This document shows positions 35,760 through 46,082 of a stretch of DNA of 64,000 nt, in pieces. A program made the position numbers and the translations under genes. The stretch spans positions 62,001-126,000 of IMG/VR virus record IMGVR_UViG_3300022200_000019; one strand, written 5' to 3'. The notes beneath the pieces were generated by a model, which saw only the letters and a program-made list of their open reading frames with translations, made no database searches and was not told the DNA's origin. The stretch's first letter is position 1; every line of letters starts with the position of its first letter.

Positions 35760-36959
35760 ATGTCACAAACAAATACAGAAACAAGTATTAACGAATGTAG
35801 TTTTTGCGGTAAAGCAAAGGAAGAAGTAGTCAAACTTATCGTCGGCGATGGTGTTAGTATTTGTAATAACTGCGTAGAGTTTTGTGTTGAGTTATTAGAA
35901 GAAGAAAAACCTATTAATAAACAAAAACACGAAGCAAAAGATATTGATCCAGTGGAACTTAAAGAGTATTTAGATCAGTTTGTCATTGGGCAGGAGCAAG
36001 CCAAGATGGTGTTAAGTGTTGCTGTTGCTAATCATTATAAACGTATCAACAAAAAAGGTGATGTTAAAGTTGATAAAAGTAATGTATTATTACTTGGCCC
36101 CACCGGGTCAGGTAAAACGTTACTTGCTAAGTCAATTGCTGAATATTTAGACGTACCATTTGCTATTGCTGATGCTACATCATTAACAGAAGCAGGCTAC
36201 GTAGGGGACGATGTTGAAGTATTAATTAGCCGTTTACTACAAAATGCAAATGGCGATGTAGAACGTGCGCAACGTGGTATTGTGTTCGTTGATGAAATTG
36301 ATAAAATTTCACGCAAGTCCGAATCTGCTAGCGTAACACGAGATGTATCTGGTGAGGGCGTGCAACAAGCATTACTTAAAATGGTAGAAGGCACGGTTGT
36401 GCGTGTTCCTAATACCGGCAATAGAAAACACCCAGCCGGAGAAATGACCGAAGTTGATACCAAAAACATTTTGTTCATTGCTGCTGGTGCATTTGTTGGA
36501 TTAGATGAAATTCTTAAAAAGCGTGTACAGGGTGCTGGTATCGGATTTGGAGCAGATGTTAATCGTGTTGATACTACTAAAGTCGACCTATTGCCAGCAG
36601 ATTTAATCAAGTTTGGACTTATCCCAGAATTTGTAGGACGGTTTGCTAGTTTTGCTTTTGTACAAGAACTTTCTCGTGAAGACATGGTATATATTTTAAC
36701 TAGTGTTGAAAACAGTCTATTGCGTCAATTTGAATATTTGTTTAAGTGTAATGAAGTTGAATTAGAATTTGATCCAGAAGCATTGTTGTTAGTTGTAGAT
36801 AAAACAATTGAACAAAAAACTGGCGCACGTGGATTGCGAGCAGAATTAGAGAAGGTATTGTTGCCGCATATGTTTAATTTAGTGCGCTATCACAAAAATA
36901 ATATAAAAAATGTGGTTATTTCTAGGGATTTAATAAATACACCTATAGCATTATTATAA
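35760..36959 (+). CDS. clpX: ATP-dependent Clp protease ATPase subunit ClpX
   Basis: CSFCGK..CNNC zinc domain, [41 protein letters not shown] loop. Confidence 0.95.
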
Positions 36960-36962
36960 ATA
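36955..36962 (+). promoter_or_regulatory. T4-type late promoter (leaderless rpsU)
   Basis: TATAAATA 6 nt before the ATG. Confidence 0.7.
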
Positions 36963-36968
36963 CACTCG

Positions 36969-37202
36969 ATGATCAAACCAAAAGGCACAAAAGTATACGT
37001 AAAAGACGGCAATGTTGAAAAAGCATTGCGTAAACTAAAAAAGAAAGTACAGCGAGGCAACGTACTTCAAGAAGTTAAAGAACGTCAAAGTTACGTACAA
37101 CCATCACAAAAACGTAAAGCCGCTAAAGAAGCAGCAAAGCGACGTTGGGCAAAACACGTTCGTTCGCAAGAATTACCAGTAAAACCTCGCGGTAAGTGGT
37201 AG
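36969..37202 (+). CDS. rpsU: Ribosomal protein bS21
   Basis: VKDGNVEKALRKLKKK...EVKERQSYVQPSQKRK..K.AA.RR. Confidence 0.88.
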   Translation: MIKPKGTKVYVKDGNVEKALRKLKKKVQRGNVLQEVKERQSYVQPSQKRKAAKEAAKRRWAKHVRSQELPVKPRGKW

Positions 37203-37203
37203 A

Positions 37204-37815
37204 TTGGATCCAAACGTTTATTACTTTACCGGGTATAACGAAAAAACCGGAAATTGTAAATTTTTCTATGTGCCGATTCCTAAAAATGGAAGCACGTCAA
37301 TTCCATATATACTTCCAGAATCAACTTTAATTATTAGCAATGAAGATGAAATTTTATTAGATGCTACAGCACTAATTATTCTTCGGGATCCAATTGAACG
37401 TTGGTTTTCTGGGATTGCTCAATTTTATCATGCTGAAAGATTTAATAACAAATTTTTAAAAGATGATTTATTAGATTCAATATATAATCGTGCAATTAAT
37501 GACATTGCGTTAGACCCCCATACATATATACAAACAAGTTTTTTTAAAGATATACAATGTCAAGGACATATATTTTTTTATATGCTTGATAAATTTAAAA
37601 CCAACTCAAAGAAATGGCGAGCGAAAAATAACATTCACTTTCATTTTGACAAATGGGAGAATTTAAATAATTCAAAAAGTTCAATAACAAAAATTAAAAT
37701 GATTAACTATCTAAAACAACGAGTTACAGCTCAGGATTTAAAAAAAATACGTGATTATTACGCCGACGATTATTTGATTATTAATCTTGTAAAAGAATTG
37801 ACAAAATATTCTTAG
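37204..37815 (+). CDS. Sulfotransferase family 2-like protein
   Basis: IPKNGSTS (5'-PSB), LRDPIERWFS (3'-PB), YYADDY. Confidence 0.65.
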   Translation: MDPNVYYFTGYNEKTGNCKFFYVPIPKNGSTSIPYILPESTLIISNEDEILLDATALIILRDPIERWFSGIAQFYHAERFNNKFLKDDLLDSIYNRAINDIALDPHTYIQTSFFKDIQCQGHIFFYMLDKFKTNSKKWRAKNNIHFHFDKWENLNNSKSSITKIKMINYLKQRVTAQDLKKIRDYYADDYLIINLVKELTKYS

Positions 37816-37826
37816 TTTGTTATAAT
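37798..37826 (+). promoter_or_regulatory. Sigma70-type promoter of hsp20 (late ATAAATA also at 37833-37839)
   Basis: TTGACA-17-TATAAT. Confidence 0.8.
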
Positions 37827-37843
37827 ACAAGGATAAATAATAT

Positions 37844-37907
37844 TGTAGACGCCAGGGTTGGGTCTACATACAAAAATAGACTTGCTTAATTTAAGGAGAC
37901 TAACATG
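37844..37907 (+). promoter_or_regulatory. ROSE-like RNA thermometer
   Basis: 5' hairpin tgtagac/gtctaca, then CTTGCTTA-att-TAAGGAG pairing the SD with a bulged G. Confidence 0.65.
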
Positions 37908-38336
37908 ACAAATCTATCTACATTCGACTTCTCACCTCTTAACCGTAGCGCCATTGGCATTGACCGCCTAATGAGTCATATGGTTCGTAACTTTGAATCT
38001 ACACAGCAGGACAACTATCCTCCATACAATATTGTTGAAGATAGTGAAAATGAGTTCACACTCGAAATTGCTGTTGCTGGTTTTAAGAAAGGTGATATCT
38101 CAATTACTTCACAAGACGGACAGCTAACTGTTTCTGGTGAAAAACAAGCGGAAGATACTCGCAAGTACACCTGGAACAAAATTGCTACACGCAAGTTCAG
38201 CCGTTCGTTCACATTAGGTGAATACGTTGAAGTAACCGGTGCTTCTCAAGAAGATGGCATTCTTTCTATTAAGTTAGAACGCATTGTTCCAGAAGCAATG
38301 AAGCCAAAAACTATTGCTATTGACTACAAAGGGTAA
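37905..38336 (+). CDS. Small heat shock protein Hsp20 (IbpA-like)
   Basis: NYPPYNI, LEIAVAGF, LTVSG, FSRSFTL, DGILSI, PEAMKPKTIAI. Confidence 0.93.
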   Translation: MTNLSTFDFSPLNRSAIGIDRLMSHMVRNFESTQQDNYPPYNIVEDSENEFTLEIAVAGFKKGDISITSQDGQLTVSGEKQAEDTRKYTWNKIATRKFSRSFTLGEYVEVTGASQEDGILSIKLERIVPEAMKPKTIAIDYKG

Positions 38337-38353
38337 TATAATGCAGTAACAGG

Positions 38354-38379
38354 ATAGGGAGGGTAATCCTCCCTATTTT
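38354..38379 (+). terminator. Rho-independent terminator
   Basis: atagggagg-gtaat-cctccctat-ttt. Confidence 0.7.
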
Positions 38380-38403
38380 GTTAAATATTAGTATAACAGG
38401 AGA

Positions 38404-38718
38404 ATGGATTTGTCTACTCAAGTTGAAACCAGAACAAGAATCAAGCCAAACATTGCACTGCAAGAACCGCCTATGTTTAAGGTAATCTACCTAAATGATG
38501 AACAAACCAGTATGCAGTTTGTTATTGATAGCCTTGTAGACTTTTTTGATTATGCACCTATTAGTGCTGAAAAGATCACAGAAGATATTCATGTACAAGG
38601 CTCAGCAGTTGTAGCAGTGTTGCCATACGAAATGGCAGAACAAAAAGGCATTGAAGTAACCGTAAGTGCTCGCAGCAACGGTTATCCACTACAAGTCAAG
38701 CTAGAACCCGAAGAATAA
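38404..38718 (+). CDS. clpS: ClpAP adaptor ClpS
   Basis: PPMFKVIYLNDEQTSMQFV..IHVQG.AVVAV..YEMAEQK..YPL. Confidence 0.9.
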   Translation: MDLSTQVETRTRIKPNIALQEPPMFKVIYLNDEQTSMQFVIDSLVDFFDYAPISAEKITEDIHVQGSAVVAVLPYEMAEQKGIEVTVSARSNGYPLQVKLEPEE

Positions 38719-38721
38719 CAC

Positions 38722-39087
38722 ATGTATATTATCGTTGGCGAAGATGCTGCCTCACAGGTAGATACCAAATATCTGGTTTTTGAATTAGATACCATTCTTT
38801 ATAATAAAAATGAAGCCCCACTTAAAAGTTATTGTGTTGTTGACAATGAACATGTTCCCTTAATTGAGGTTAATCGAATCGGTGAACTACAAGAACTACA
38901 TCAAAATTTAATTAAAAATTATCATAAACGTAACTGGAATTTTTGCTTACAAGCAATTGAACATCTGAAAGGAAAATTTCGTGGCGAATTAGATACATTT
39001 TATGATGATTTGGAAAAACGCTGCTCGGTATTTCAACAATTCGAACCGCCCGCAAACTGGACTGGTGTTTACGATAAGACCAAGTAA
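38722..39087 (+). CDS. Stand-alone homolog of the C-terminal region of the CHASE2 adenylate cyclase
   Basis: ELHQNL..YHKRNW..LKGKFRGELDTFY..RC..NWTG aligns with cyclase ELHNNM..YKERDF..LKGEFDGQMDKYY..RC..SWNG. Confidence 0.65.
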   Translation: MYIIVGEDAASQVDTKYLVFELDTILYNKNEAPLKSYCVVDNEHVPLIEVNRIGELQELHQNLIKNYHKRNWNFCLQAIEHLKGKFRGELDTFYDDLEKRCSVFQQFEPPANWTGVYDKTK

Positions 39088-39152: not shown

Positions 39153-39644
39153 TTGAAAAGCAACGACGATGGCCTTGCGGCTATTGTAGCAATTATTCTA
39201 ACAGTAATCTTTGTACTGTTTACATTTAAAGCAGAGGCAGGTGAGTTAACTCACCAGTTTCATAGTCCTGCGTTCAGCGGCAATGGGTATAGTACCCACG
39301 TCCTAACTATAGATCAGTTAGAACAACAACGTAAGCAGAAAATAAAAGACGACGAACAAGCCGCTATTGATAAAGCAGAACGAGACGCTAAATCAACTAA
39401 TATCTACAAGTTTAAGAACAACTTAGAAAGTCGTGTTTACGCACAACTATCTAAGCAAATTGCAGACGCTCTTTTTGGCGAAAGCAGTAATTTAGCAGAC
39501 ACAAGTTGGTCGGAAGTAGAAACCCCATTCGGTGATACCATTAAATGGAAACGTGAGAACGATATTGTATATGTTGAAATATACGATAGCAATGGCGATT
39601 TAGCCTCTGAGTTCCAGACACCGGTTGGGGATTTCGCATTTTGA
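39153..39644 (+). CDS. csgF: Curli assembly protein CsgF-like
   Basis: Signal/TM segment ending AEA, then GELTHQFHSPAFSG (cf. CsgF GTMTFQFRNPNFGG); adjacent to csgG. Confidence 0.75.
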   Translation: MKSNDDGLAAIVAIILTVIFVLFTFKAEAGELTHQFHSPAFSGNGYSTHVLTIDQLEQQRKQKIKDDEQAAIDKAERDAKSTNIYKFKNNLESRVYAQLSKQIADALFGESSNLADTSWSEVETPFGDTIKWKRENDIVYVEIYDSNGDLASEFQTPVGDFAF

Positions 39645-40483
39645 CACGCTTAATTCTACTACTACTCGCTGCTGGTATACTTGGAGGGTGCGTAGCAAAC
39701 CCGCCTAAACAGTACGAACCCCCATCTCGAATTGTAACTCACGTTGAAGGATTTATGGATATCCCGCCTCCTAGTGGCGGTAAACTTGTTGCGGCTGTAT
39801 ATGGTTTTCAAGATAAAACTGGACAGCGTAAACCCTCTGACAAACTTGCGAATATTAGTTACGCAGTAACGCAAGGTGCTGAAGTATGGGTTATTAAAGC
39901 CCTCAAGGAAGTGGGCGGAGGAGAATGGTTTAGAGTTGTAGAGCGTGTTGGATTAGACAATTTAACAAAAGAGCGTCAAATTATCCGACAAGCACGTCAG
40001 CAAGTTAATGACGAAACACCTCTTAAACCAATGCTGTTTGCTGGTGTGTTAGTTGAAGGAGCCATCACTGGTTACGACTCTAACACGTTAACCGGCGGAG
40101 CAGGAGCCAGATACTTAGGTATTGGTCCAAGCACAGAATACCGCCAGGATGTGGTAACTGTGAGTATGCGGTTAATAAGCGTTCAAAGTGGAGAAGTCTT
40201 ACTTAATACAAGTGTTACTAAAACTATTGTTAGTTTTGGCGATCACGTAAGTTTGTTCCGGTTTATTGATATGGGAACAAAGGCACTTGAGCTAGAATCA
40301 GGAACCACTGAAAACGAGCCGGTGAACTATGCTGTTCGTGTAGCAATCGAACAATGTGTAGTTGAACTGGTTAAAGATGGCGAACGCATAGGTATTTGGT
40401 CATATAAGACTCACGAAGAAGGAGCCAATGATACTAAAGAAGAAGTAAAGACGGATGAAAACTCCGTGCGTGGAGAAAAATAA
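39641..40483 (+). CDS. csgG: Curli secretion channel lipoprotein CsgG
   Basis: Lipobox LGGC; VYGFQDKTGQRKP, AVTQGA, WFRVVER.GLDNLTKERQIIR, GGAGARYLGIG, YRQDVVTV. Confidence 0.93.
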   Translation: MTRLILLLLAAGILGGCVANPPKQYEPPSRIVTHVEGFMDIPPPSGGKLVAAVYGFQDKTGQRKPSDKLANISYAVTQGAEVWVIKALKEVGGGEWFRVVERVGLDNLTKERQIIRQARQQVNDETPLKPMLFAGVLVEGAITGYDSNTLTGGAGARYLGIGPSTEYRQDVVTVSMRLISVQSGEVLLNTSVTKTIVSFGDHVSLFRFIDMGTKALELESGTTENEPVNYAVRVAIEQCVVELVKDGERIGIWSYKTHEEGANDTKEEVKTDENSVRGEK

Positions 40484-41172
40484 TGCGCAAAATATTATAT
40501 GTCCTATTAGGACTTTGGAGTTCAACAGTATTTGCCAGTGACGTGTATATTGATCAAGCAGGTTCAAGTACAACTATTGATATTACACAAACTGGTTCAA
40601 GCAACGAAGTTAGCGGCGACGCTGGCACTACAACTGCGGCAAGTGTAGATGGTACAGGTATTGACTTGGACATTACACAAATTGGTTCAAGCAACATAGC
40701 AGAAATTAACTTAGATACTGCTACAAGTGCTGACGTAGAATATACTGCTACAGGTAGTGATAACTTGTTTGACATTTATGTTAATGGTGGTTCCTCAAAT
40801 ACTGCTACAGTAAACGTTACTGGTGACAGCAACGAAGTAACAATTTGTGGAACCAATGGAGCAGCAAACTCAGCAGCAGGCTTTGCTACTATTACAAGTT
40901 CGGGCATAACTACTGCTGGAACAACTTGCTCAACAGGCATTGCGAGTAATGGTAACACTAATACTGTTACTGCGTATGGCGACTATAACTTAGTTAACAT
41001 TGAGCAAGGAGCAGGTGTTGGTGGATCAACTAACACAGTTACCATTGGCACAGCACTAGCAGGCGGCGATAACAACGTTGTAAACATTGTACAGGATAAC
41101 TTGGAAGCAAATACCGTAACATTAACAGTTGACGGTAGCAGCAACCGTGTCAATATTTTACAAGATAACTAA
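40483..41172 (+). CDS. Curlin-repeat protein (CsgA/CsgB-like)
   Basis: Signal peptide, then repeats of the IxQxGxxN type (YIDQAGSS, ITQTGSSN, ITQIGSSN, IVQDN). Confidence 0.75.
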   Translation: MRKILYVLLGLWSSTVFASDVYIDQAGSSTTIDITQTGSSNEVSGDAGTTTAASVDGTGIDLDITQIGSSNIAEINLDTATSADVEYTATGSDNLFDIYVNGGSSNTATVNVTGDSNEVTICGTNGAANSAAGFATITSSGITTAGTTCSTGIASNGNTNTVTAYGDYNLVNIEQGAGVGGSTNTVTIGTALAGGDNNVVNIVQDNLEANTVTLTVDGSSNRVNILQDN

Positions 41173-42262
41173 TTTCCTACTGATAGGGTTGTTCTCAGTA
41201 TCAGCCCTGGCAGCAATAGGAACTATCACAGAGCAACAGGGTCCTGATGCTCAACTTAAACGCGACAGTGAAACTATAGTTGCTCGCAAAGGCACTGGTC
41301 TTGAAATGGATGACGAAGTAAGAACGGCAGCAACTAAACTTAATTTAACATTTGAAGATGATACAAAGGTAGCAATGACTGAACAAAGTGTATTGCTTAT
41401 TGATGACTTTGTTTACGATCCCAATGCTAAAACTGGCAAACTAGCGATGCAAGTAGCAATGGGCACAGTTCGTTATGCGTCAGGCGGCATTGCTAAGAAC
41501 AACAGAGAAAACGTTCGTATGCGCACACCAACAGCAACCATATCAGTACGCGGTACTGACTTTGCTATGGTTGTAGACGAAGTTGGCCGTAGTCTAGTAA
41601 CATTACTCCCCAGTTGTCCAGACTTTGGTTTAGTAGAAAACAAAGATGATGAAGAAAAATGTCCAGTTGGTGAGATTATGGTAAGCACAGATGCTGGGTA
41701 TGTATTAATGAATCAAGCATACCAAACTACAATTGTAGCAAGTGCGTTACAAGAGCCAACGAAACCCAAAATTTTAGACGATAAGCCAACATTAAACAAC
41801 TTGCTTATTATTTCGCCACCGCCTCAATTCCCACGTGGGTTTGACTCAGCAGAAGAAGAAGCACAACAAGTTACATTCTTAGATGCTGACTTGTTAGAGT
41901 TTGATGACTTAGCACAGGATTTATTAGCAGACGATAGTTTAGAGCAAAATGACTTGGATCAAGATAAACTAGAAGGCGAGTTTTTAGATGACATGTTAAT
42001 GATGTTATTAGATCCGGGATTGGATGACGCACTCAAAGAACGTGATGGTGTATTGCCGACCTTAGCAGATTATCCTTGGGTAAAAGGTTATTACAACGAA
42101 CAAGAAATTACAGTTTATTCTGAACGCCCACCACACATTGCGGAAATTAAAACAACTCGCGATACAGACGCAGATGTAGTTATTACGCAGGACGGTGTAA
42201 AAGCAACTATTATTGAGAACGGAGGCGGCAATGTTATTATCAACATTACGCAAACTCAGTAG
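41129..42262 (+). CDS. Exported FecR-domain protein with acidic linker and curlin-like C-terminal strand
   Basis: Signal peptide; DEVRT..FEDDT..GTVRYASG..RTPTATISVRGTDF; ends GGGNVIINITQTQ. Confidence 0.75.
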   Translation: MTVAATVSIFYKITNFLLIGLFSVSALAAIGTITEQQGPDAQLKRDSETIVARKGTGLEMDDEVRTAATKLNLTFEDDTKVAMTEQSVLLIDDFVYDPNAKTGKLAMQVAMGTVRYASGGIAKNNRENVRMRTPTATISVRGTDFAMVVDEVGRSLVTLLPSCPDFGLVENKDDEEKCPVGEIMVSTDAGYVLMNQAYQTTIVASALQEPTKPKILDDKPTLNNLLIISPPPQFPRGFDSAEEEAQQVTFLDADLLEFDDLAQDLLADDSLEQNDLDQDKLEGEFLDDMLMMLLDPGLDDALKERDGVLPTLADYPWVKGYYNEQEITVYSERPPHIAEIKTTRDTDADVVITQDGVKATIIENGGGNVIINITQTQ

Positions 42263-43571
42263 TCTATTATTCTTATTTGCTACAACTGTGTGGGCAGATA
42301 GTGTTCTCATCATTCACCAAAACTACTCCAGTGTTCATTCCAATGTCGGCGGACGTCTAACTAACGAAGGGCATACGGTAACTTACTCTACATCAGAAGT
42401 AAATGCTAGTACTATTGCCAACTACAATCAAGTTTGGGACGTAAGGTATAGTTCGCTGTCAAGCACACAGGCATCAGTGTATGACACGTTTGTTCAGAAT
42501 GGAGGATTCTTATACTTAGTAACAGAGAATCCAAGTTGTTGCGGTACACGAAATAGTGCTGTTGCTTCAATGATATCTAATATGGGCGGCGGCAGTGGAT
42601 TAACGATTGGTGGAAGTGCTGGTTCAACTTCAAACAATATCACACAGGTTAATACAACTTATATGACTGCTTTGTCATCAGGAACTTATATTACATTTGC
42701 CGCAGGTAGTAACATCACAAACTATGGCAACGGACAATGGTTGTTCAAAGATAGCATTGGTAGAGTTGGCGGCGTTATGTGGGTAGGCAATGCTGGAAAC
42801 TTGTCACAAGGGTACTCGGGCACGGTAGTCACGGTTGCTGACATCAACTGGTTAGATGCTACTCGTTTTACAGGAACAAACATCACAGCCTTAGACGATA
42901 TTATCGCAGGTATTGTTGCTGGTACCGTATCAGGTACTATCAGTGGAAGTGGAAACACTGGCGGCGGAGCAGCCGCAACACCTGTGTACAGTTCAGGCAT
43001 AACAGCCGCACAAACCCTAAGAAGAAATGCATTCACAGGAACAGGTGCGGAGATAAATGCTGATATCAACGGTAGTAACAATGATGTTTATATACATCAA
43101 GCAGGAACGCATTATATAGAACTTGGGATAGTAGGAAGTTCAAATACAGTTAACTTAGAGCAAGCATCAACTCAAGTAGGAATCATACATTACGCAGAGA
43201 CAGATATCATCGGCGATAGCAATACATTAGATTTGATACAATCCGGTGATGGCAATAAAACAGCATTTATTACAGTAACAGGTGATAACAATATAGCAGA
43301 TATCGCACAGCGCGATAGCGGACAGCATTATCTACAACTTGATTTAATAGGTGGTGGTCATGATGCCACTGTAGTACAAGAAGGTACAGGCAATCACGCA
43401 GCCACAGTAGAGTTAACAAACTCGGGTGGAGCCTGGACATTTGGGTTGACACAATCAGGCAGTACGGATAAAGAATATAGTTTACCGCACTCAATGAGTG
43501 ACGGTAGCACAACAAGCGGAACGTGTTATGTAGCAGCAGGATGCTCGTTAACAGTCATACAAAGTGATTAA
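42231..43571 (+). CDS. Curlin-repeat protein with N-terminal globular passenger domain
   Basis: GGAGG RBS, signal peptide, about 200-aa alpha/beta domain, Gly linker, C-terminal GxxN.V.I.Q repeats. Confidence 0.7.
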   Translation: MLLSTLRKLSSLLFLFATTVWADSVLIIHQNYSSVHSNVGGRLTNEGHTVTYSTSEVNASTIANYNQVWDVRYSSLSSTQASVYDTFVQNGGFLYLVTENPSCCGTRNSAVASMISNMGGGSGLTIGGSAGSTSNNITQVNTTYMTALSSGTYITFAAGSNITNYGNGQWLFKDSIGRVGGVMWVGNAGNLSQGYSGTVVTVADINWLDATRFTGTNITALDDIIAGIVAGTVSGTISGSGNTGGGAAATPVYSSGITAAQTLRRNAFTGTGAEINADINGSNNDVYIHQAGTHYIELGIVGSSNTVNLEQASTQVGIIHYAETDIIGDSNTLDLIQSGDGNKTAFITVTGDNNIADIAQRDSGQHYLQLDLIGGGHDATVVQEGTGNHAATVELTNSGGAWTFGLTQSGSTDKEYSLPHSMSDGSTTSGTCYVAAGCSLTVIQSD

Positions 43572-43614: not shown

Positions 43615-44025
43615 ATGAAAAAATTGGTGTGTGCGGCACTTGCTGTATACTGCTTAAATGTTACAGCACACAGTCGCGATGATTATGAATACATAAACTG
43701 GAATTCATTTCGTGTTTATGAAGAAATAGAAAAACGCCCAAAACTTGATGTTTTTGCTGGGCATAGTGTTGGTTTTGGTTACACACAAAAGTATAATCAA
43801 ATTGATACACTTGTTGTAGGCGAAGTAGGTGGCGCTCATAGCCGCTGGCTAGGCCCTAGAACTCAATTATACACAGAAGCAAATGTAGCAACAGACTTGT
43901 TTACAGAAGCAAAAGTAAACATCAATCATTTTAACAACAAATATTCAGTTACAAGATTTGTTCTACGCAAAGACAACACTGACCAAGGTGGCTTTGTTGG
44001 ATTTGGTTATATGCGTCGTTTTTGA
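43615..44025 (+). CDS. Small exported protein, possible outer-membrane beta-barrel
   Basis: Signal peptide, alternating beta pattern, C-terminal GFVGFGYMRRF. Confidence 0.45.
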   Translation: MKKLVCAALAVYCLNVTAHSRDDYEYINWNSFRVYEEIEKRPKLDVFAGHSVGFGYTQKYNQIDTLVVGEVGGAHSRWLGPRTQLYTEANVATDLFTEAKVNINHFNNKYSVTRFVLRKDNTDQGGFVGFGYMRRF

Positions 44026-44039
44026 CACTAAATATCCGT

Positions 44040-46082
44040 ATGAAGAAACTACTGAGTCCATGGTGGGCATTGATTACCTTATTTGTTCTCACGGCTGTAT
44101 TTTTACAACGTCCTAACTTTACTGAAAGTATCAAATTAAATTACTTTGACACACTTATTACTAGTAGAGAAGCAGTAGACAATAACATTTATATTGTTAA
44201 TATTGACGAAGCCGCACTAGAGAAATATGGTCAGTATCCTTTTCCACGTAACATTTACGGCGACATTATCAAAGACATTTACAATCGTGGCGCTGGATTA
44301 GTTATTTGGAATATTATGATGCCGGAAGCAGATCGCTTTGGCGGAGATGAACAGTTAGCAGGAGTTATGACTGAATTTCCTGTTATATTAGCAAGCCGCC
44401 CCTCTGTCAAAAATAAAAATGTTCCAATGCAACCGGCATCAAATACAATCAATGCACAGTATGTGGATCAGTTATTTCCTTATCCAGGTATTATTTCAAA
44501 TATTCCAGAACTTGAACAAGTAGCAGTAGGCTCTGGTATTGTTTCAACTGAACCTGAAATCGATGGCGTTAACAGAAGATTACCAGCACTTGCTGTGGTT
44601 GGTGATTTGGTGTATCCAGGTATTGCTCTTGAAACACTTCGTGTTATTGCAGGACAACCTAGTTTTGATGTTAAACTAGCACCTAATGGTATTGATAAAT
44701 TTAGAATACGTGGTCACGGACCTATTGCTACAGATGAAATGGGACGTATTTGGATTGATTGGGCACAGCGTAGCAAACAGGTTAGCGTAATCAATATGCC
44801 TGCAGACTTTGGCGGCGCAGTAGTTATCGTAGATGTGACTGCGGCAGGCATTGCTAACCCTGTTCCTACAGCGTTAGGAGCAAAATTTCCCGGTGAAGTT
44901 CACTCAGCAATGCTAGGAACAATGTTTAATAAAACAAATATTCAACGTCCATACTGGGCAGATACATTTGAAATTCCTGCGGCATTTTTAGCAGGACTAT
45001 TATTAATTTTAGTATCACGTTGGACCTGGCTAGGACTAGGATTAACTGTTGTGCTTGGCGGTGCTGTTGTCCCTGCGTCAATGTATATGTTTGACACAGA
45101 ACTATTTTTGTTAGACGCAACAGGTCCTCTTGCAATTATTGTCCTTGTGGCATTACACACATACGGTATTAAATTTGTACGTGAGTTCTTAGAAAAGCAA
45201 GCAATCAAGAAACAGTTTGCCGGTTACTGCTCACCGGAAGTTGTTCGTTTATTACAAGAAAACCCGGATCTTATTAAGAAGGGTGTTAAGAAAGACGTAA
45301 GTGTTATGTTCTCAGATTTGCGCGGCTTTACTCCAATTGGCGAACACTTTGGCGCAGACGTTAAAGGTTTAGGAGATTATATGAATGGCTATATGGATGC
45401 TATTACGCAGCCTATCCTAAATCACAACGGTATGGTTATTAAGTATGTAGGTGACGCAAGCATGCACATACAAGGTGCGCCTATTGAAGATGACAGACAC
45501 GCATACAACATTGTCGAAACAGGCTTACAAATGTTAGACGCTGTTGACGCTTATACACGAGAAGCAGAAGCACGTGGTTTGCCACCAGCAGCAATGGGTT
45601 TCGGCATTAACTCAGGCGAAGGCTTTATTGGTGAAATGGGCAGCACAGCAAGACACAGTTATGACATCTTAGGCGATATGGTTTCAACAGCGGCTCGATT
45701 AGAAGCACGTTGTAAAGCATATGGTGTGCTATGTATCATTGGCGCAGAAACATACAACAGAACAGCGGATGACTTCTTCTACTTATATCTGGACAATTTA
45801 CAACCAAAAGGCAAAACAGTAGCAGATTTCATTTATACAGCGTTACGCATCAAAGGAAATATCACGGACTATGGCACTGCACGTGAGTTACATAATAATA
45901 TGCATCAAGCATATAAAGAAAGAGATTTTGATAAAGCAATTGGTATGTGCATGGGCCTGAAAGGTGAATTTGACGGGCAAATGGACAAATATTATAAAAT
46001 GTGGATTGAACGTTGCGAATTAATGAAGACCATGAAATTAGATAAGAGCTGGAATGGCGAGTGGATTGCTAACGAAAAATAA
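44040..46082 (+). CDS. CHASE2-domain class III adenylate cyclase
   Basis: IVNIDEAALEKYGQYPFPR (CHASE2), three TMs, FSDLRGFT, KYVGDA, GINSG, YDILGDMVSTAARLE; ATG 44040 follows CTAAATA. Confidence 0.92.
   Translation: MKKLLSPWWALITLFVLTAVFLQRPNFTESIKLNYFDTLITSREAVDNNIYIVNIDEAALEKYGQYPFPRNIYGDIIKDIYNRGAGLVIWNIMMPEADRFGGDEQLAGVMTEFPVILASRPSVKNKNVPMQPASNTINAQYVDQLFPYPGIISNIPELEQVAVGSGIVSTEPEIDGVNRRLPALAVVGDLVYPGIALETLRVIAGQPSFDVKLAPNGIDKFRIRGHGPIATDEMGRIWIDWAQRSKQVSVINMPADFGGAVVIVDVTAAGIANPVPTALGAKFPGEVHSAMLGTMFNKTNIQRPYWADTFEIPAAFLAGLLLILVSRWTWLGLGLTVVLGGAVVPASMYMFDTELFLLDATGPLAIIVLVALHTYGIKFVREFLEKQAIKKQFAGYCSPEVVRLLQENPDLIKKGVKKDVSVMFSDLRGFTPIGEHFGADVKGLGDYMNGYMDAITQPILNHNGMVIKYVGDASMHIQGAPIEDDRHAYNIVETGLQMLDAVDAYTREAEARGLPPAAMGFGINSGEGFIGEMGSTARHSYDILGDMVSTAARLEARCKAYGVLCIIGAETYNRTADDFFYLYLDNLQPKGKTVADFIYTALRIKGNITDYGTARELHNNMHQAYKERDFDKAIGMCMGLKGEFDGQMDKYYKMWIERCELMKTMKLDKSWNGEWIANEK

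What the first reader, a model, noticed from the sequence alone, without database searches (positions are those of the whole stretch)
41129..42262. The FecR protein and both curlins share a C-terminal curlin-type strand (Gln at -3)
Seen: the three consecutive exported proteins end ..NRVNILQDN, ..NVIINITQTQ and ..CSLTVIQSD. The FecR protein has a long acidic linker (DDLAQDLLADDSLEQNDLDQD) between the FecR domain and this tail. Inference: the tail could enter the CsgG pore or cap the curlin beta-solenoid while the FecR domain stays periplasmic, physically tethering the fibre to the cyclase sensor.
Basis: inference. Interest (0 to 1): 0.6.

Follow-up and report, generated by a model that had tools for sequence, protein, structure and literature searches.

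The report
Phage FecR protein with curlin-like tail
In a marine T4-like phage's curli-fibre gene cluster, the protein annotated as an iron regulator (FecR) ends in a conserved fibre-subunit-like repeat, so it is more likely a part of the fibre machinery that may connect it to a neighbouring signalling enzyme.

Summary
In this T4-like phage record, curlin-1, the FecR protein and curlin-2 end NRVNILQDN, NVIINITQTQ and CSLTVIQSD. No other ORF of 100 aa or more in the window has this ending.

The FecR tail is conserved. Its terminal Gln is the only invariant residue among 51 diverse C-terminal domains, though it sits at -3 or -2 depending on clade. Profile comparison aligns the last 31 residues end to end with the last repeat of phage curlin-1 (score 29.8; shuffled controls at most 12.7). 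Pfam's curlin model does not detect it.

The protein has three parts:
- a FecR/PupR-like periplasmic domain with an invariant Cys pair, whose first half resembles the LapA/MpIBP retention plug;
- an acidic linker of fixed length (68-81 aa);
- a confident six-strand C-terminal domain with no solved-structure match.

CsgF, CsgG, curlins, this protein and a CHASE2 cyclase sit together in all 80 viral loci examined and in phages HTVC008M and Melnitz. Predicted docking of the C-domain on curlin-1 got weak support only (0.35 vs 0.00).

The cluster, including FecR and the cyclase, is already published (PMC9599517). I did not find the curlin-like tail and three-part architecture described. Tethering through CsgG and signalling to the cyclase remain untested.

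The parts
39153..39644 (+). CsgF homolog (163 aa)
   Evidence: Pfam PF10614, E 8.4e-14
39641..40483 (+). CsgG lipoprotein pore (280 aa; LGGC lipobox)
   Evidence: Pfam PF03783, E 1.9e-50
40483..41172 (+). Curlin-1 (229 aa), signal peptide plus curlin-type repeats; ends NRVNILQDN
   Evidence: Pfam Curlin_rpt 29.1 bits; family alignment A3
41147..42262 (+). FecR-domain protein, 371 aa from GTG 41147 (377 aa from TTG 41129). The start overlaps the end of curlin-1 and the end overlaps the start of curlin-2.
41147..41212 (+). Signal peptide (residues 1-22, ...SVSALA|AIG)
   Evidence: Read from the sequence and alignment A1; no signal-peptide predictor was run
41213..41761 (+). FecR/PupR-CCSSD-like beta domain (about residues 23-205) with invariant Cys157 and Cys172
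   Evidence: Pfam PF04773 36.4 bits. AF2 pLDDT 80-89. 6ovm_R Z 14.6, 4m0h_A Z 13.2, 5ix9 Z 10.6 over residues 22-96. Cys invariance.
41762..42040 (+). Acidic, mostly disordered linker. The core (residues 227-298) is 72 aa here.
   Evidence: pLDDT under 50. In 182 homologs: length 68-81 aa (median 71), 27% D/E, median net charge -15.
42041..42259 (+). C-terminal six-strand beta domain (residues 299-371)
   Evidence: AF2 on A2: pLDDT 91, pTM 0.77. No PDB match. Atlas shape matches are viral clusters only.
42167..42259 (+). Curlin-type repeat (last 31 residues, ...DADVVITQDGVKATIIENGGGNVIINITQTQ) with the invariant terminal Gln
   Evidence: hhalign against the last repeat of curlin-1: score 29.8, P 1.5e-4; 100 column-shuffled controls reach at most 12.7. 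The terminal Gln is the only invariant column in A2.
42231..43571 (+). Curlin-2 (446 aa from ATG 42231): a non-curlin N-terminal domain, then curlin repeats, then C-x(4-6)-C before the last strand; ends CSLTVIQSD
   Evidence: Pfam Curlin_rpt 28.8 bits at residues 334-366
43615..44025 (+). 136-aa exported ORF ending ...GFGYMRRF (OMP-like). Autotransporter beta-domain proteins hold this position in related phages.
   Evidence: no Pfam hit
44022..46082 (+). CHASE2 sensor plus class III adenylate/guanylate cyclase (686 aa)
   Evidence: Pfam PF05226 E 3.8e-30 and PF00211 E 1.7e-15; sits with the cluster in related phages
38722..39087 (+). 121-aa ORF upstream of CsgF, paralogous to the C-terminal ~65 residues of the cyclase
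   Evidence: BLASTP E 3e-10; similar ORFs precede CsgF in other loci

Best explanation
The ORF encodes a conserved core component of the phage-borne curli (type VIII secretion) module, not an iron regulator. It is an exported three-part adaptor.

(1) A disulfide-containing FecR/PupR-like beta domain, which most likely stays in the periplasm.
(2) An acidic, largely disordered linker of fixed length (about 70 residues).
(3) A small C-terminal beta domain whose last ~30 residues are a curlin-type repeat, equivalent to the final repeat of the neighbouring curlin-1. It carries the Q...G...N...Q signature residues and an invariant terminal Gln.

Proposed mechanism: the curlin-like module docks on curlin subunits or a fibre end by the strand-on-strand stacking that joins curlin repeats. 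It would act as an anchor or nucleator, or as a cap. The FecR domain would be the periplasmic partner of the CHASE2 sensor of the co-encoded cyclase, as suggested by FecR-CHASE2 gene pairs in bacteria. Curli export or assembly in the infected cell would thereby be coupled to cyclic-nucleotide signalling.

Shown here: the architecture, its conservation, the similarity to curlin repeats, and the synteny.
Inferred: binding to curlin, the topology, and the link to the cyclase.
For: - Tail conservation: 120 of 120 close homologs, 80 viral loci down to about 40% identity, and phages HTVC008M and Melnitz. The terminal Gln is the only invariant column in 51 diverse C-domains.
- Curlin likeness: hhalign of the tail profile against the phage curlin-1 profile scores 29.8 (P 1.5e-4), aligned end to end with the last repeat. 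Column-shuffled controls average 9.0, sd 1.5, max 12.7; the reversed control scores 12.6. Other curlin-1 and curlin-2 repeats score 23-24. The last 10 residues up to Q are 4.1/10 identical in register between FecR and curlin-1 tails.
- Structure: the N-domain matches PupR CCSSD (Z 14.6) and the LapA/MpIBP retention module 5ix9 (Z 10.6, rmsd 2.0 A, 71 of 76 residues). The C-domain has pLDDT 91.
- Linker length is 68-81 aa in 182 homologs, and Cys157/Cys172 are invariant.
- Synteny: CsgF-CsgG-curlin-FecR in all 80 loci, with overlapping genes. A CHASE2 cyclase lies nearby, including in all 5 large contigs where it first seemed absent.
- FecR-domain/CHASE2 operons are documented in Burkholderiales and P. 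aeruginosa (PMC5192318).
- Docking of the C-domain on curlin-1: ipSAE 0.35 vs best control 0.00, 'weak support'.
- The record has no STN domain, TonB-dependent receptor or CsgE.
Against: - Pfam Curlin_rpt does not detect the tail in any of 10 diverse homologs, even at E up to 10.
- AF2 folds the tail as part of a compact six-strand domain, so it may not be free to stack on a fibre.
- The complex prediction is only 'weak support'. The tool states that such a pass is more often wrong than right unless the guess was likely beforehand. The three runs agree in only 17% or more of their contacts, and one run scored 0.19.
- Excess similarity of tails from the same phage over shuffled pairings is marginal (169 of 5000 shuffles reach the observed score).
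- No FecR-CHASE2 contact was tested.
- The curlins also carry conserved Cys pairs, so a disulfide alone does not prove periplasmic retention.
- The record is only 61% complete, so the absence of STN, TonB receptor or CsgE genes is provisional.
Confidence: 0.45

Rival explanations
1. Periplasmic chaperone, gate or cap that stands in for the missing CsgE/CsgC/CsgH. The whole protein stays in the periplasm. Its curlin-like C-domain binds unpolymerised curlins, blocking premature amyloid formation or handing them to CsgG. The FecR domain reports the substrate load to the CHASE2 cyclase.
For: - No CsgE in the record; PMC9599517 notes that phage clusters lack CsgE, CsgC and CsgD.
- The curlin-like repeat could cap subunits.
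- Genes overlap with both curlins, which suggests coupled production.
- The FecR fold and invariant Cys pair point to a periplasmic protein.
Against: - There is no sequence or fold similarity to CsgE, CsgC or CsgH; Pfam finds only FecR, and the C-domain has no PDB match.
- A linker held at about 70 residues is not obviously needed by a soluble chaperone.
Confidence: 0.25
2. The resemblance has no function in curli assembly. The protein is only the periplasmic accessory of the CHASE2 cyclase (or an iron-related regulator, as PMC9599517 proposes). Its C-domain is an independent fold that never contacts curlins.
For: - Pfam's curlin model misses the tail.
- The C-domain is predicted as a self-contained fold.
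- The complex support is weak.
- FecR-CHASE2 pairs exist without any curli genes.
Against: - The profile match lies far above composition-matched shuffles and is in end-to-end register.
- The invariant residues are the ones that define curlin repeats.
- The full-length architecture was found only beside CsgG and curlins.
- The record has no STN or TonB-dependent receptor partner, and the protein has no anti-sigma domain.
Confidence: 0.15
3. The shared C-terminal strand (phi-x-phi-x-Q plus 0-2 polar residues) is a targeting or recognition signal for this CsgG/CsgF variant. It marks all three proteins as substrates, and the FecR protein is fully or partly exported. Export could proceed C-terminus first, leaving the FecR domain as a plug.
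For: - All three exported proteins share the ending in three divergent phages.
- The first half of the N-domain resembles a retention plug used by adhesins that are exported C-terminus first.
- The linker length is fixed.
Against: - In E. coli the curli secretion signal is N-terminal (the N22 segment of CsgA; established knowledge).
- For the curlins, the ending is explained simply as the end of the last repeat.
- Some curlin-1 homologs lack the Q altogether (...NITTGN).
Confidence: 0.1
4. The protein is a fully secreted minor fibre subunit. The curlin repeat inserts it into the fibre, and the FecR domain is displayed outside the cell as a binding module, as the N-terminal domain of curlin-2 may be.
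For: Curlin-2 shows the same logic: a variable non-curlin N-terminal domain followed by C-terminal curlin repeats.
Against: - FecR/PupR CCSSD domains are periplasmic in the characterised systems (established knowledge).
- The invariant Cys pair would fold the domain before it reaches the narrow CsgG constriction.
- The tight association with the CHASE2 sensor, which faces the periplasm.
Confidence: 0.07

Closest known systems
Phage-encoded T8SS/curli cluster of pelagiphages (PMC9599517; PMC7029224; cultured phages HTVC008M and Melnitz)
   Same: Same gene set and order: small ORF, CsgF, CsgG, curlin, FecR, curlin, CHASE2 cyclase. The window protein is 46-47% identical to the HTVC008M and Melnitz proteins over the FecR domain. 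The FecR protein and the cyclase were already listed as cluster members.
   Different: Those papers treat FecR as an iron-dependent regulator. Text searches of PMC9599517 found no mention of a C-terminal domain or curlin-like repeat in it. PMC9004378 states that Melnitz lacks csgA/B. The present record is a larger T4-like phage: at least 213 kb at 61% completeness, with relatives of 329-349 kb.
Curlin subunits CsgA/CsgB (Pfam PF07012 Curlin_rpt)
   Same: The last ~30 residues carry the strand-turn-strand pattern with Q, G, N/G and terminal Q. They align with the last repeat of phage curlin-1.
   Different: There is one repeat rather than five or more. It is embedded in a six-strand domain and fused to a FecR domain. 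The Pfam model does not detect it.
FecR/PupR anti-sigma regulators (cell-surface signalling)
   Same: Pfam FecR domain, and a fold match to the PupR C-terminal cell-surface signalling domain (Z 14.6).
   Different: There is a signal peptide in place of the cytoplasmic anti-sigma domain and transmembrane helix. The record has no STN-bearing TonB-dependent transducer. The neighbour is a CHASE2 cyclase.
FecR-domain protein plus CHASE2 sensor operons (Burkholderia 'BiofilmReg', P. aeruginosa PA4035/4036 type; PMC5192318)
   Same: An exported FecR-domain protein is encoded next to a CHASE2-domain membrane sensor.
   Different: There the accessory protein carries LysM and the sensor is a histidine kinase. 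Here it carries a curlin-like domain and the sensor is a cyclase.
Retention module of LapA/MpIBP type 1-secreted adhesins (PDB 5ix9)
   Same: Residues 22-96 superpose on 5ix9 (Z 10.6, rmsd 2.0 A). The layout is also alike: folded periplasmic domain, flexible linker, surface-exposed repeats.
   Different: The secretion system differs (T1SS/TolC-like pore vs CsgG). No LapG site was examined. Threading through CsgG is untested.

Membership tests
Pfam FecR domain (PF04773) | Score above the gathering cut-off and the FecR/PupR CCSSD fold | tested here: met
   36.4 bits vs cut-off 24; 6ovm_R Z 14.6 and 4m0h_A Z 13.2
FecR-type anti-sigma regulator (FecIRA cell-surface signalling) | N-terminal cytoplasmic anti-sigma domain plus a transmembrane helix | tested here: not met
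   The N-terminus is a cleavable-type signal peptide followed directly by the FecR domain; Pfam finds no other domain
FecR-type anti-sigma regulator (FecIRA cell-surface signalling) | Partner TonB-dependent transducer with an STN domain | tested here: not met
   The 213-kb record has no STN and no TonB_dep_Rec match. The record is 61% complete, and host genes were not examined.
Curlin repeat (PF07012) | Match to the Pfam Curlin_rpt model | tested here: not met
   No Curlin_rpt hit in 10 diverse tails at E up to 10. The neighbouring phage curlins themselves reach only about 29 bits.
Curlin repeat (PF07012) | Strand-turn-strand unit with conserved Q, G, N and terminal Q, related to true curlin repeats | tested here: met
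   hhalign against phage curlin-1: 29.8 (P 1.5e-4) vs shuffles at most 12.7; other repeats score 23-24. Q57, G69 and I74 are nearly invariant and Q78 is invariant.
Curlin repeat (PF07012) | Incorporation into, or templating of, the curli beta-solenoid | tested here: inconclusive
   Complex of the C-domain with curlin-1: ipSAE 0.35 vs best control 0.00, 'weak support', no interface reported
Phage T8SS (curli) module | Sits with CsgF, CsgG, curlin(s) and the CHASE2 cyclase in phage genomes | tested here: met
   80 of 80 viral loci plus HTVC008M and Melnitz; own record has T4-type gp23
CsgE / CsgC / CsgH accessory proteins | Sequence or fold similarity to these families | tested here: not met
   Pfam gives only FecR. 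The record has no CsgE. The C-domain has no PDB match with Z of 5 or more. CsgC and CsgH were not searched for specifically.
LapA-type retention module | Fold of the periplasmic plug domain | tested here: met
   5ix9: Z 10.6, rmsd 2.0 A, 71 of 76 residues aligned, 22% identity
LapA-type retention module | Chain threaded through the outer-membrane pore; T1SS export; LapG cleavage site | not testable with these tools
   The cluster has no T1SS. Topology needs experiment.

The most novel reading that the evidence does not exclude
The protein is a pore-threaded anchor, a curli counterpart of the LapA retention mechanism. The disulfide-locked FecR domain plugs CsgG from the periplasm. The fixed-length acidic linker runs through the CsgG/CsgF channel. 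The C-terminal curlin-like domain sits outside and nucleates or holds the fibre. Occupancy of, or load on, this tether is read by the CHASE2 cyclase, so the infected cell's cyclic-nucleotide level reports fibre assembly or attachment.
Probability: 0.15. Interest if true: 0.8.

Novelty: new variant of a known kind. Interest (0 to 1): 0.55.

Why it matters
Curli clusters are among the most widespread accessory modules of marine pelagiphages. PMC9599517 detected them at all 65 GOV2.0 ocean stations, yet their function is unknown. The hosts of the cultured phages (SAR11, OM43) have no curli genes of their own.

The cluster's 'FecR' has been read as an iron regulator. If it is instead a curlin-tagged adaptor, three things follow:
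- The phage module contains a fibre-linked component with no counterpart in the E. coli curli system.
- There is a rationale for why a CHASE2 cyclase always travels with the cluster.
- There are concrete experiments (tail deletion, Gln substitution, polymerisation assays) that could be run with the cultured phages Melnitz and HTVC008M.

It would also be one more example of a FecR-like domain working with a CHASE2 sensor, a domain whose ligand is still unknown.

Tried and rejected
- Pfam scan of 10 diverse tails at E up to 10: no Curlin_rpt hit.
- Foldseek against the PDB and VIA-align against 48,161 chains with the C-domain model: nothing above Z 3.8 and no curli fibril match.
- ESM Atlas feature search of the C-domain: no usable hit. 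The Atlas shape search returned only viral clusters. Two of them (234-237 aa 'hypothetical proteins') could be either curlins or FecR fragments and could not be resolved.
- PDB sequence search with the A1 profile: nothing meaningful.
- Complex prediction of curlin-1 with the C-domain: 'weak support' only (ipSAE 0.35, best control 0.00).
- Co-variation of FecR and curlin-1 tails within the same phage: marginal (169 of 5000 shuffles reach the observed BLOSUM mean; identity not significant).
- Search for cellular full-length homologs. The genome-contig hits with the full architecture sit in MAGs of unrelated taxa. The one contig checked that had a match carries T4 gp23 on the same contig as the cluster, so it is a phage contig. 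The other MAG checked (G006) had no gp23 match, so its origin is unresolved. In 300 sampled genomes of one class only the FecR domain was found.
- megablast of the region against the phage collection: no match.
- Considered and rejected: the iron-regulator reading, because there is no anti-sigma domain, STN or TonB receptor.
- Not used: the large representative-protein search (the claim does not rest on absence of relatives), the sequencing-run tools, and any non-standard genetic code.
Full report
**What the window is.** The window is bases 62001-126000 of a 212,917-bp IMG/VR virus record that CheckV rates 61% complete. It carries phage replication and nucleotide-metabolism genes and a tail-spike-like protein. 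The record encodes a T4-type gp23 major capsid protein (E 6.6e-99). Related contigs with the same cluster reach 329-349 kb, and one has terminal repeats and is rated 100% complete. So this is a large T4-like marine phage.

**The observation.** All genes below are on the + strand, with Pfam results.
- CsgF, 39153-39644 (PF10614, E 8.4e-14).
- CsgG, 39641-40483 (PF03783, E 1.9e-50).
- Curlin-1, 40483-41172 (Curlin_rpt, 29.1 bits).
- FecR-domain protein, 41129 or 41147 to 42262 (PF04773, 36.4 bits, cut-off 24).
- Curlin-2, 42213 or 42231 to 43571 (Curlin_rpt, 28.8 bits).
- A 136-aa exported ORF, 43615-44025.
- CHASE2 plus class III cyclase, 44022-46082.

The ending [IVL]x[IVL]xQx[DNQ] occurs in these 3 of the window's 90 ORFs of 100 aa or more and nowhere else. 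Q at -3 occurs in 5 of 70 + strand ORFs, against a Q frequency of 3.8%. The literal observation is correct and is not chance.

**Conservation.** The word-based protein search returned 3971 relatives. The best 120 are 50-99% identical and 355-385 aa long, and all end ...G.VNI.QDG..A.....GG..V.INITQ.Q. At least 590 IMG/VR contigs encode a relative. In the 80 loci fetched, at 39-66% identity, the order CsgF-CsgG-curlin-FecR is kept, usually with overlapping genes, and is followed by a second curlin and/or other exported proteins and the cyclase. Five large contigs seemed to lack the cyclase. All five have one CHASE2 protein close to the cluster, either on the other strand or about 10 kb away.

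Two cultured Kyanoviridae phages carry the same cluster: Pelagibacter phage HTVC008M and Methylophilales phage Melnitz. Their three C-termini are DIDIIQRD / AITINQTN / SATVTQN and DIDISQTD / EVTIIQIN / AVSVTQN.

The '-3' register is not general. In 182 non-redundant FecR homologs the terminal-strand Q is followed by two residues in 127 and by one in 51, and many curlin-2 proteins end ...VVRQ. In an alignment of 51 diverse C-terminal domains, that Gln is the only invariant column.

**Is the tail curlin-like?** A profile of 173 FecR C-termini was compared by hhalign with a profile of 73 phage curlin-1 proteins. The score was 29.8 (P 1.5e-4). The last 31 residues aligned end to end with the last repeat of curlin-1. 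One hundred column-shuffled versions of the curlin-1 alignment gave a mean of 9.0, sd 1.5 and a maximum of 12.7, and the reversed alignment gave 12.6. A few shuffled runs printed format errors, so the control count is approximate. The tail also matches an N-terminal curlin-1 repeat (24.0) and curlin-2 repeats (23-24).

In register, the ten residues ending at the terminal Q are 4.1/10 identical between FecR and curlin-1 tails. Both follow G-x(3,4)-phi-x-phi-x-Q. The nearly invariant residues (Q57, G69, I74) and the invariant Q78 of the 80-residue domain are the kinds of residue that define curlin repeats (the comparison with the E. coli consensus S-X5-Q-X-G-X-G-N-X-A-X3-Q rests on my own knowledge).

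Against this, Pfam's Curlin_rpt model detects none of 10 diverse tails. I therefore call the tail a curlin-type repeat by profile similarity to phage curlins, not a Pfam family member.

**Architecture.** AlphaFold2 on a 44-sequence alignment gives three parts (residues numbered from the GTG start at 41147).
- A well-predicted N-terminal beta domain, residues 22-200.
- A low-confidence stretch from about residue 205 to 296 (pLDDT mostly below 50).
- A well-predicted six-strand C-terminal domain, pLDDT 85-90.

*N-terminal domain.* It matches the PupR C-terminal cell-surface signalling domain (6ovm_R: Z 14.6, rmsd 2.8 A, 136 residues aligned) and a Parabacteroides anti-sigma factor (4m0h_A: Z 13.2). 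Its first half (residues 22-96) matches 5ix9 (Z 10.6, rmsd 2.0 A, 71 of 76 residues). The next unrelated row has Z 4.8. 5ix9 is the N-terminal domain of the Marinomonas ice-binding adhesin. It served as the template for the LapA retention module, which stays in the periplasm while the chain threads the outer-membrane pore.

*Linker.* The core is 68-81 residues in 182 homologs (median 71), with 27% Asp+Glu and a median net charge of -15. Two cysteines in the FecR domain are invariant.

*C-terminal domain.* Folded alone from 51 sequences, it gives pLDDT 91 and pTM 0.77. It has no convincing match among solved structures: best Z 3.8, and no Foldseek match at E 0.001 or better. Its shape recurs only in viral ESM-Atlas clusters.

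**Distribution.** Full-length relatives found in the genome collection lie in MAGs of unrelated taxa. The Luteolibacter MAG contig carries T4 gp23 on the same contig as the cluster, so it is a phage contig; the Caulobacteraceae MAG (G006) had no gp23 match, so its origin is unresolved. In 300 sampled genomes of the class of one such MAG, every other match covers only the FecR domain. That domain often lies near the N-terminus of very large ORFs. As far as I searched, the three-part architecture was found only on phage contigs or on MAG contigs of unresolved origin.

**Binding test.** The verdict was 'weak support'. The median ipSAE was 0.35 (runs 0.36, 0.19, 0.35) against a best control of 0.00. 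Partner pLDDT was at least 78, and the runs agreed in at least 17% of their contacts. The tool's calibration says the mark was reached by 58 of 80 solved complexes and 2 of 110 mismatched pairs, but a pass at 0.60 or under is more often wrong than right unless the guess was likely beforehand. This raises my odds only slightly.

**What is already known.**
- PMC7029224 described CsgF, CsgG and three further genes in pelagimyophages.
- PMC9599517 identified CsgA/B-like fibre genes, FecR, an adenylate cyclase and a small 'histidine kinase' in podo- and myovirus pelagiphages. It reported transcripts and world-wide occurrence, and discussed FecR as an iron-dependent regulator. Text searches of that paper for 'C-terminal', 'C-terminus' and 'curlin' found nothing about a curlin-like domain in FecR.
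- PMC9004378 stated that Melnitz lacks csgA/B, although its GenBank record annotates two curlin-repeat proteins and a FecR-domain protein.
- FecR-domain genes next to CHASE2 sensors are documented in Burkholderiales and P. aeruginosa (PMC5192318).

So the cluster and its membership are known. I did not find the domain architecture of the FecR protein, or its curlin-type C-terminus, described.

**Interpretation.** The iron-regulator reading fits poorly. There is no anti-sigma domain and no transmembrane anchor (a signal peptide takes their place). The record has no STN domain and no TonB-dependent receptor, with the caveat that it is incomplete and host genes were not examined.

The best-supported reading is an adaptor. 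A curlin-type module can stack on curlin subunits or a fibre end. It is joined by a fixed-length acidic linker to a periplasmic FecR domain, which is the likely partner of the CHASE2 sensor.

The data cannot decide between three versions of this:
- The whole protein stays in the periplasm as a cap, chaperone or substrate sensor, replacing the missing CsgE.
- The terminal strand acts as a shared recognition signal.

A purely coincidental resemblance remains possible but is disfavoured by the shuffle controls, the end-to-end register and the exclusive association with curli genes.

**Limits.** There was no signal-peptide predictor, no access to model coordinates, one complex job only, and no experimental data.

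Noticed in passing
window 38722-39087 (+): A 121-aa ORF just upstream of CsgF is a paralog of the last ~65 residues of the CHASE2 cyclase (BLASTP E 3e-10). Similar small ORFs precede CsgF in L025, L026, L051, L061 and L068. It is probably the gene that PMC9599517 calls a histidine kinase. Pfam finds no domain in it.
   Followed up: partly
window 43615-44025 (+): A 136-aa ORF with a signal peptide ends ...GFGYMRRF, an outer-membrane-protein-like terminal Phe. The same position holds autotransporter beta-domain proteins (PF03797) in L004 and L005, and large proteins ending ..KGF or ..YRF in other phage loci.
   Followed up: partly
window 42231-43571 (+); L008 7058-8383: Curlin-2 has a non-curlin N-terminal domain of about 270 aa, followed by curlin repeats. 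That domain differs between this phage and HTVC008M. A conserved C-x(4-6)-C sits just before the last strand. It looks like a cargo domain carried on a curlin module.
   Followed up: no
window 35760-38718 (+); L002 and L005: ClpX, ribosomal protein S21, Hsp20 and ClpS genes lie directly upstream of the curli cluster. Related phages add IMPDH, heme oxygenase and a ferredoxin-dependent bilin reductase in the same block.
   Followed up: no
L122-L132 (genomes G230, G095, G269, G104, G272 and others): In sampled genomes of one bacterial class, the FecR-like domain often lies within a few hundred residues of the start of very large open frames, up to about 6900 aa. This recalls the retention modules of giant adhesins.
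   Followed up: partly
L089-L098 (genome contigs): Full-length homologs found in 'genomes' of Rhodobacteraceae, Legionellales, Flavobacteriaceae, Pirellulales, Luteolibacter and others sit in curli-cluster contigs. The Luteolibacter contig also carries T4 gp23, so at least that one is a phage contig binned into a MAG.
   Followed up: partly
G002 and G004 (contigs of L051 and L083): T4-like phage records of 329 kb (terminal repeats, 100% complete) and 349 kb (97% complete) carry the same curli/FecR/CHASE2 module. The module is therefore not confined to the ~140-150 kb pelagimyophages described in the literature.
   Followed up: no
L007 (Melnitz MZ577097 52015-54809): The published description of Melnitz says it lacks csgA/csgB, but its GenBank record annotates two curlin-associated repeat proteins flanking the FecR-domain protein.
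   Followed up: yes
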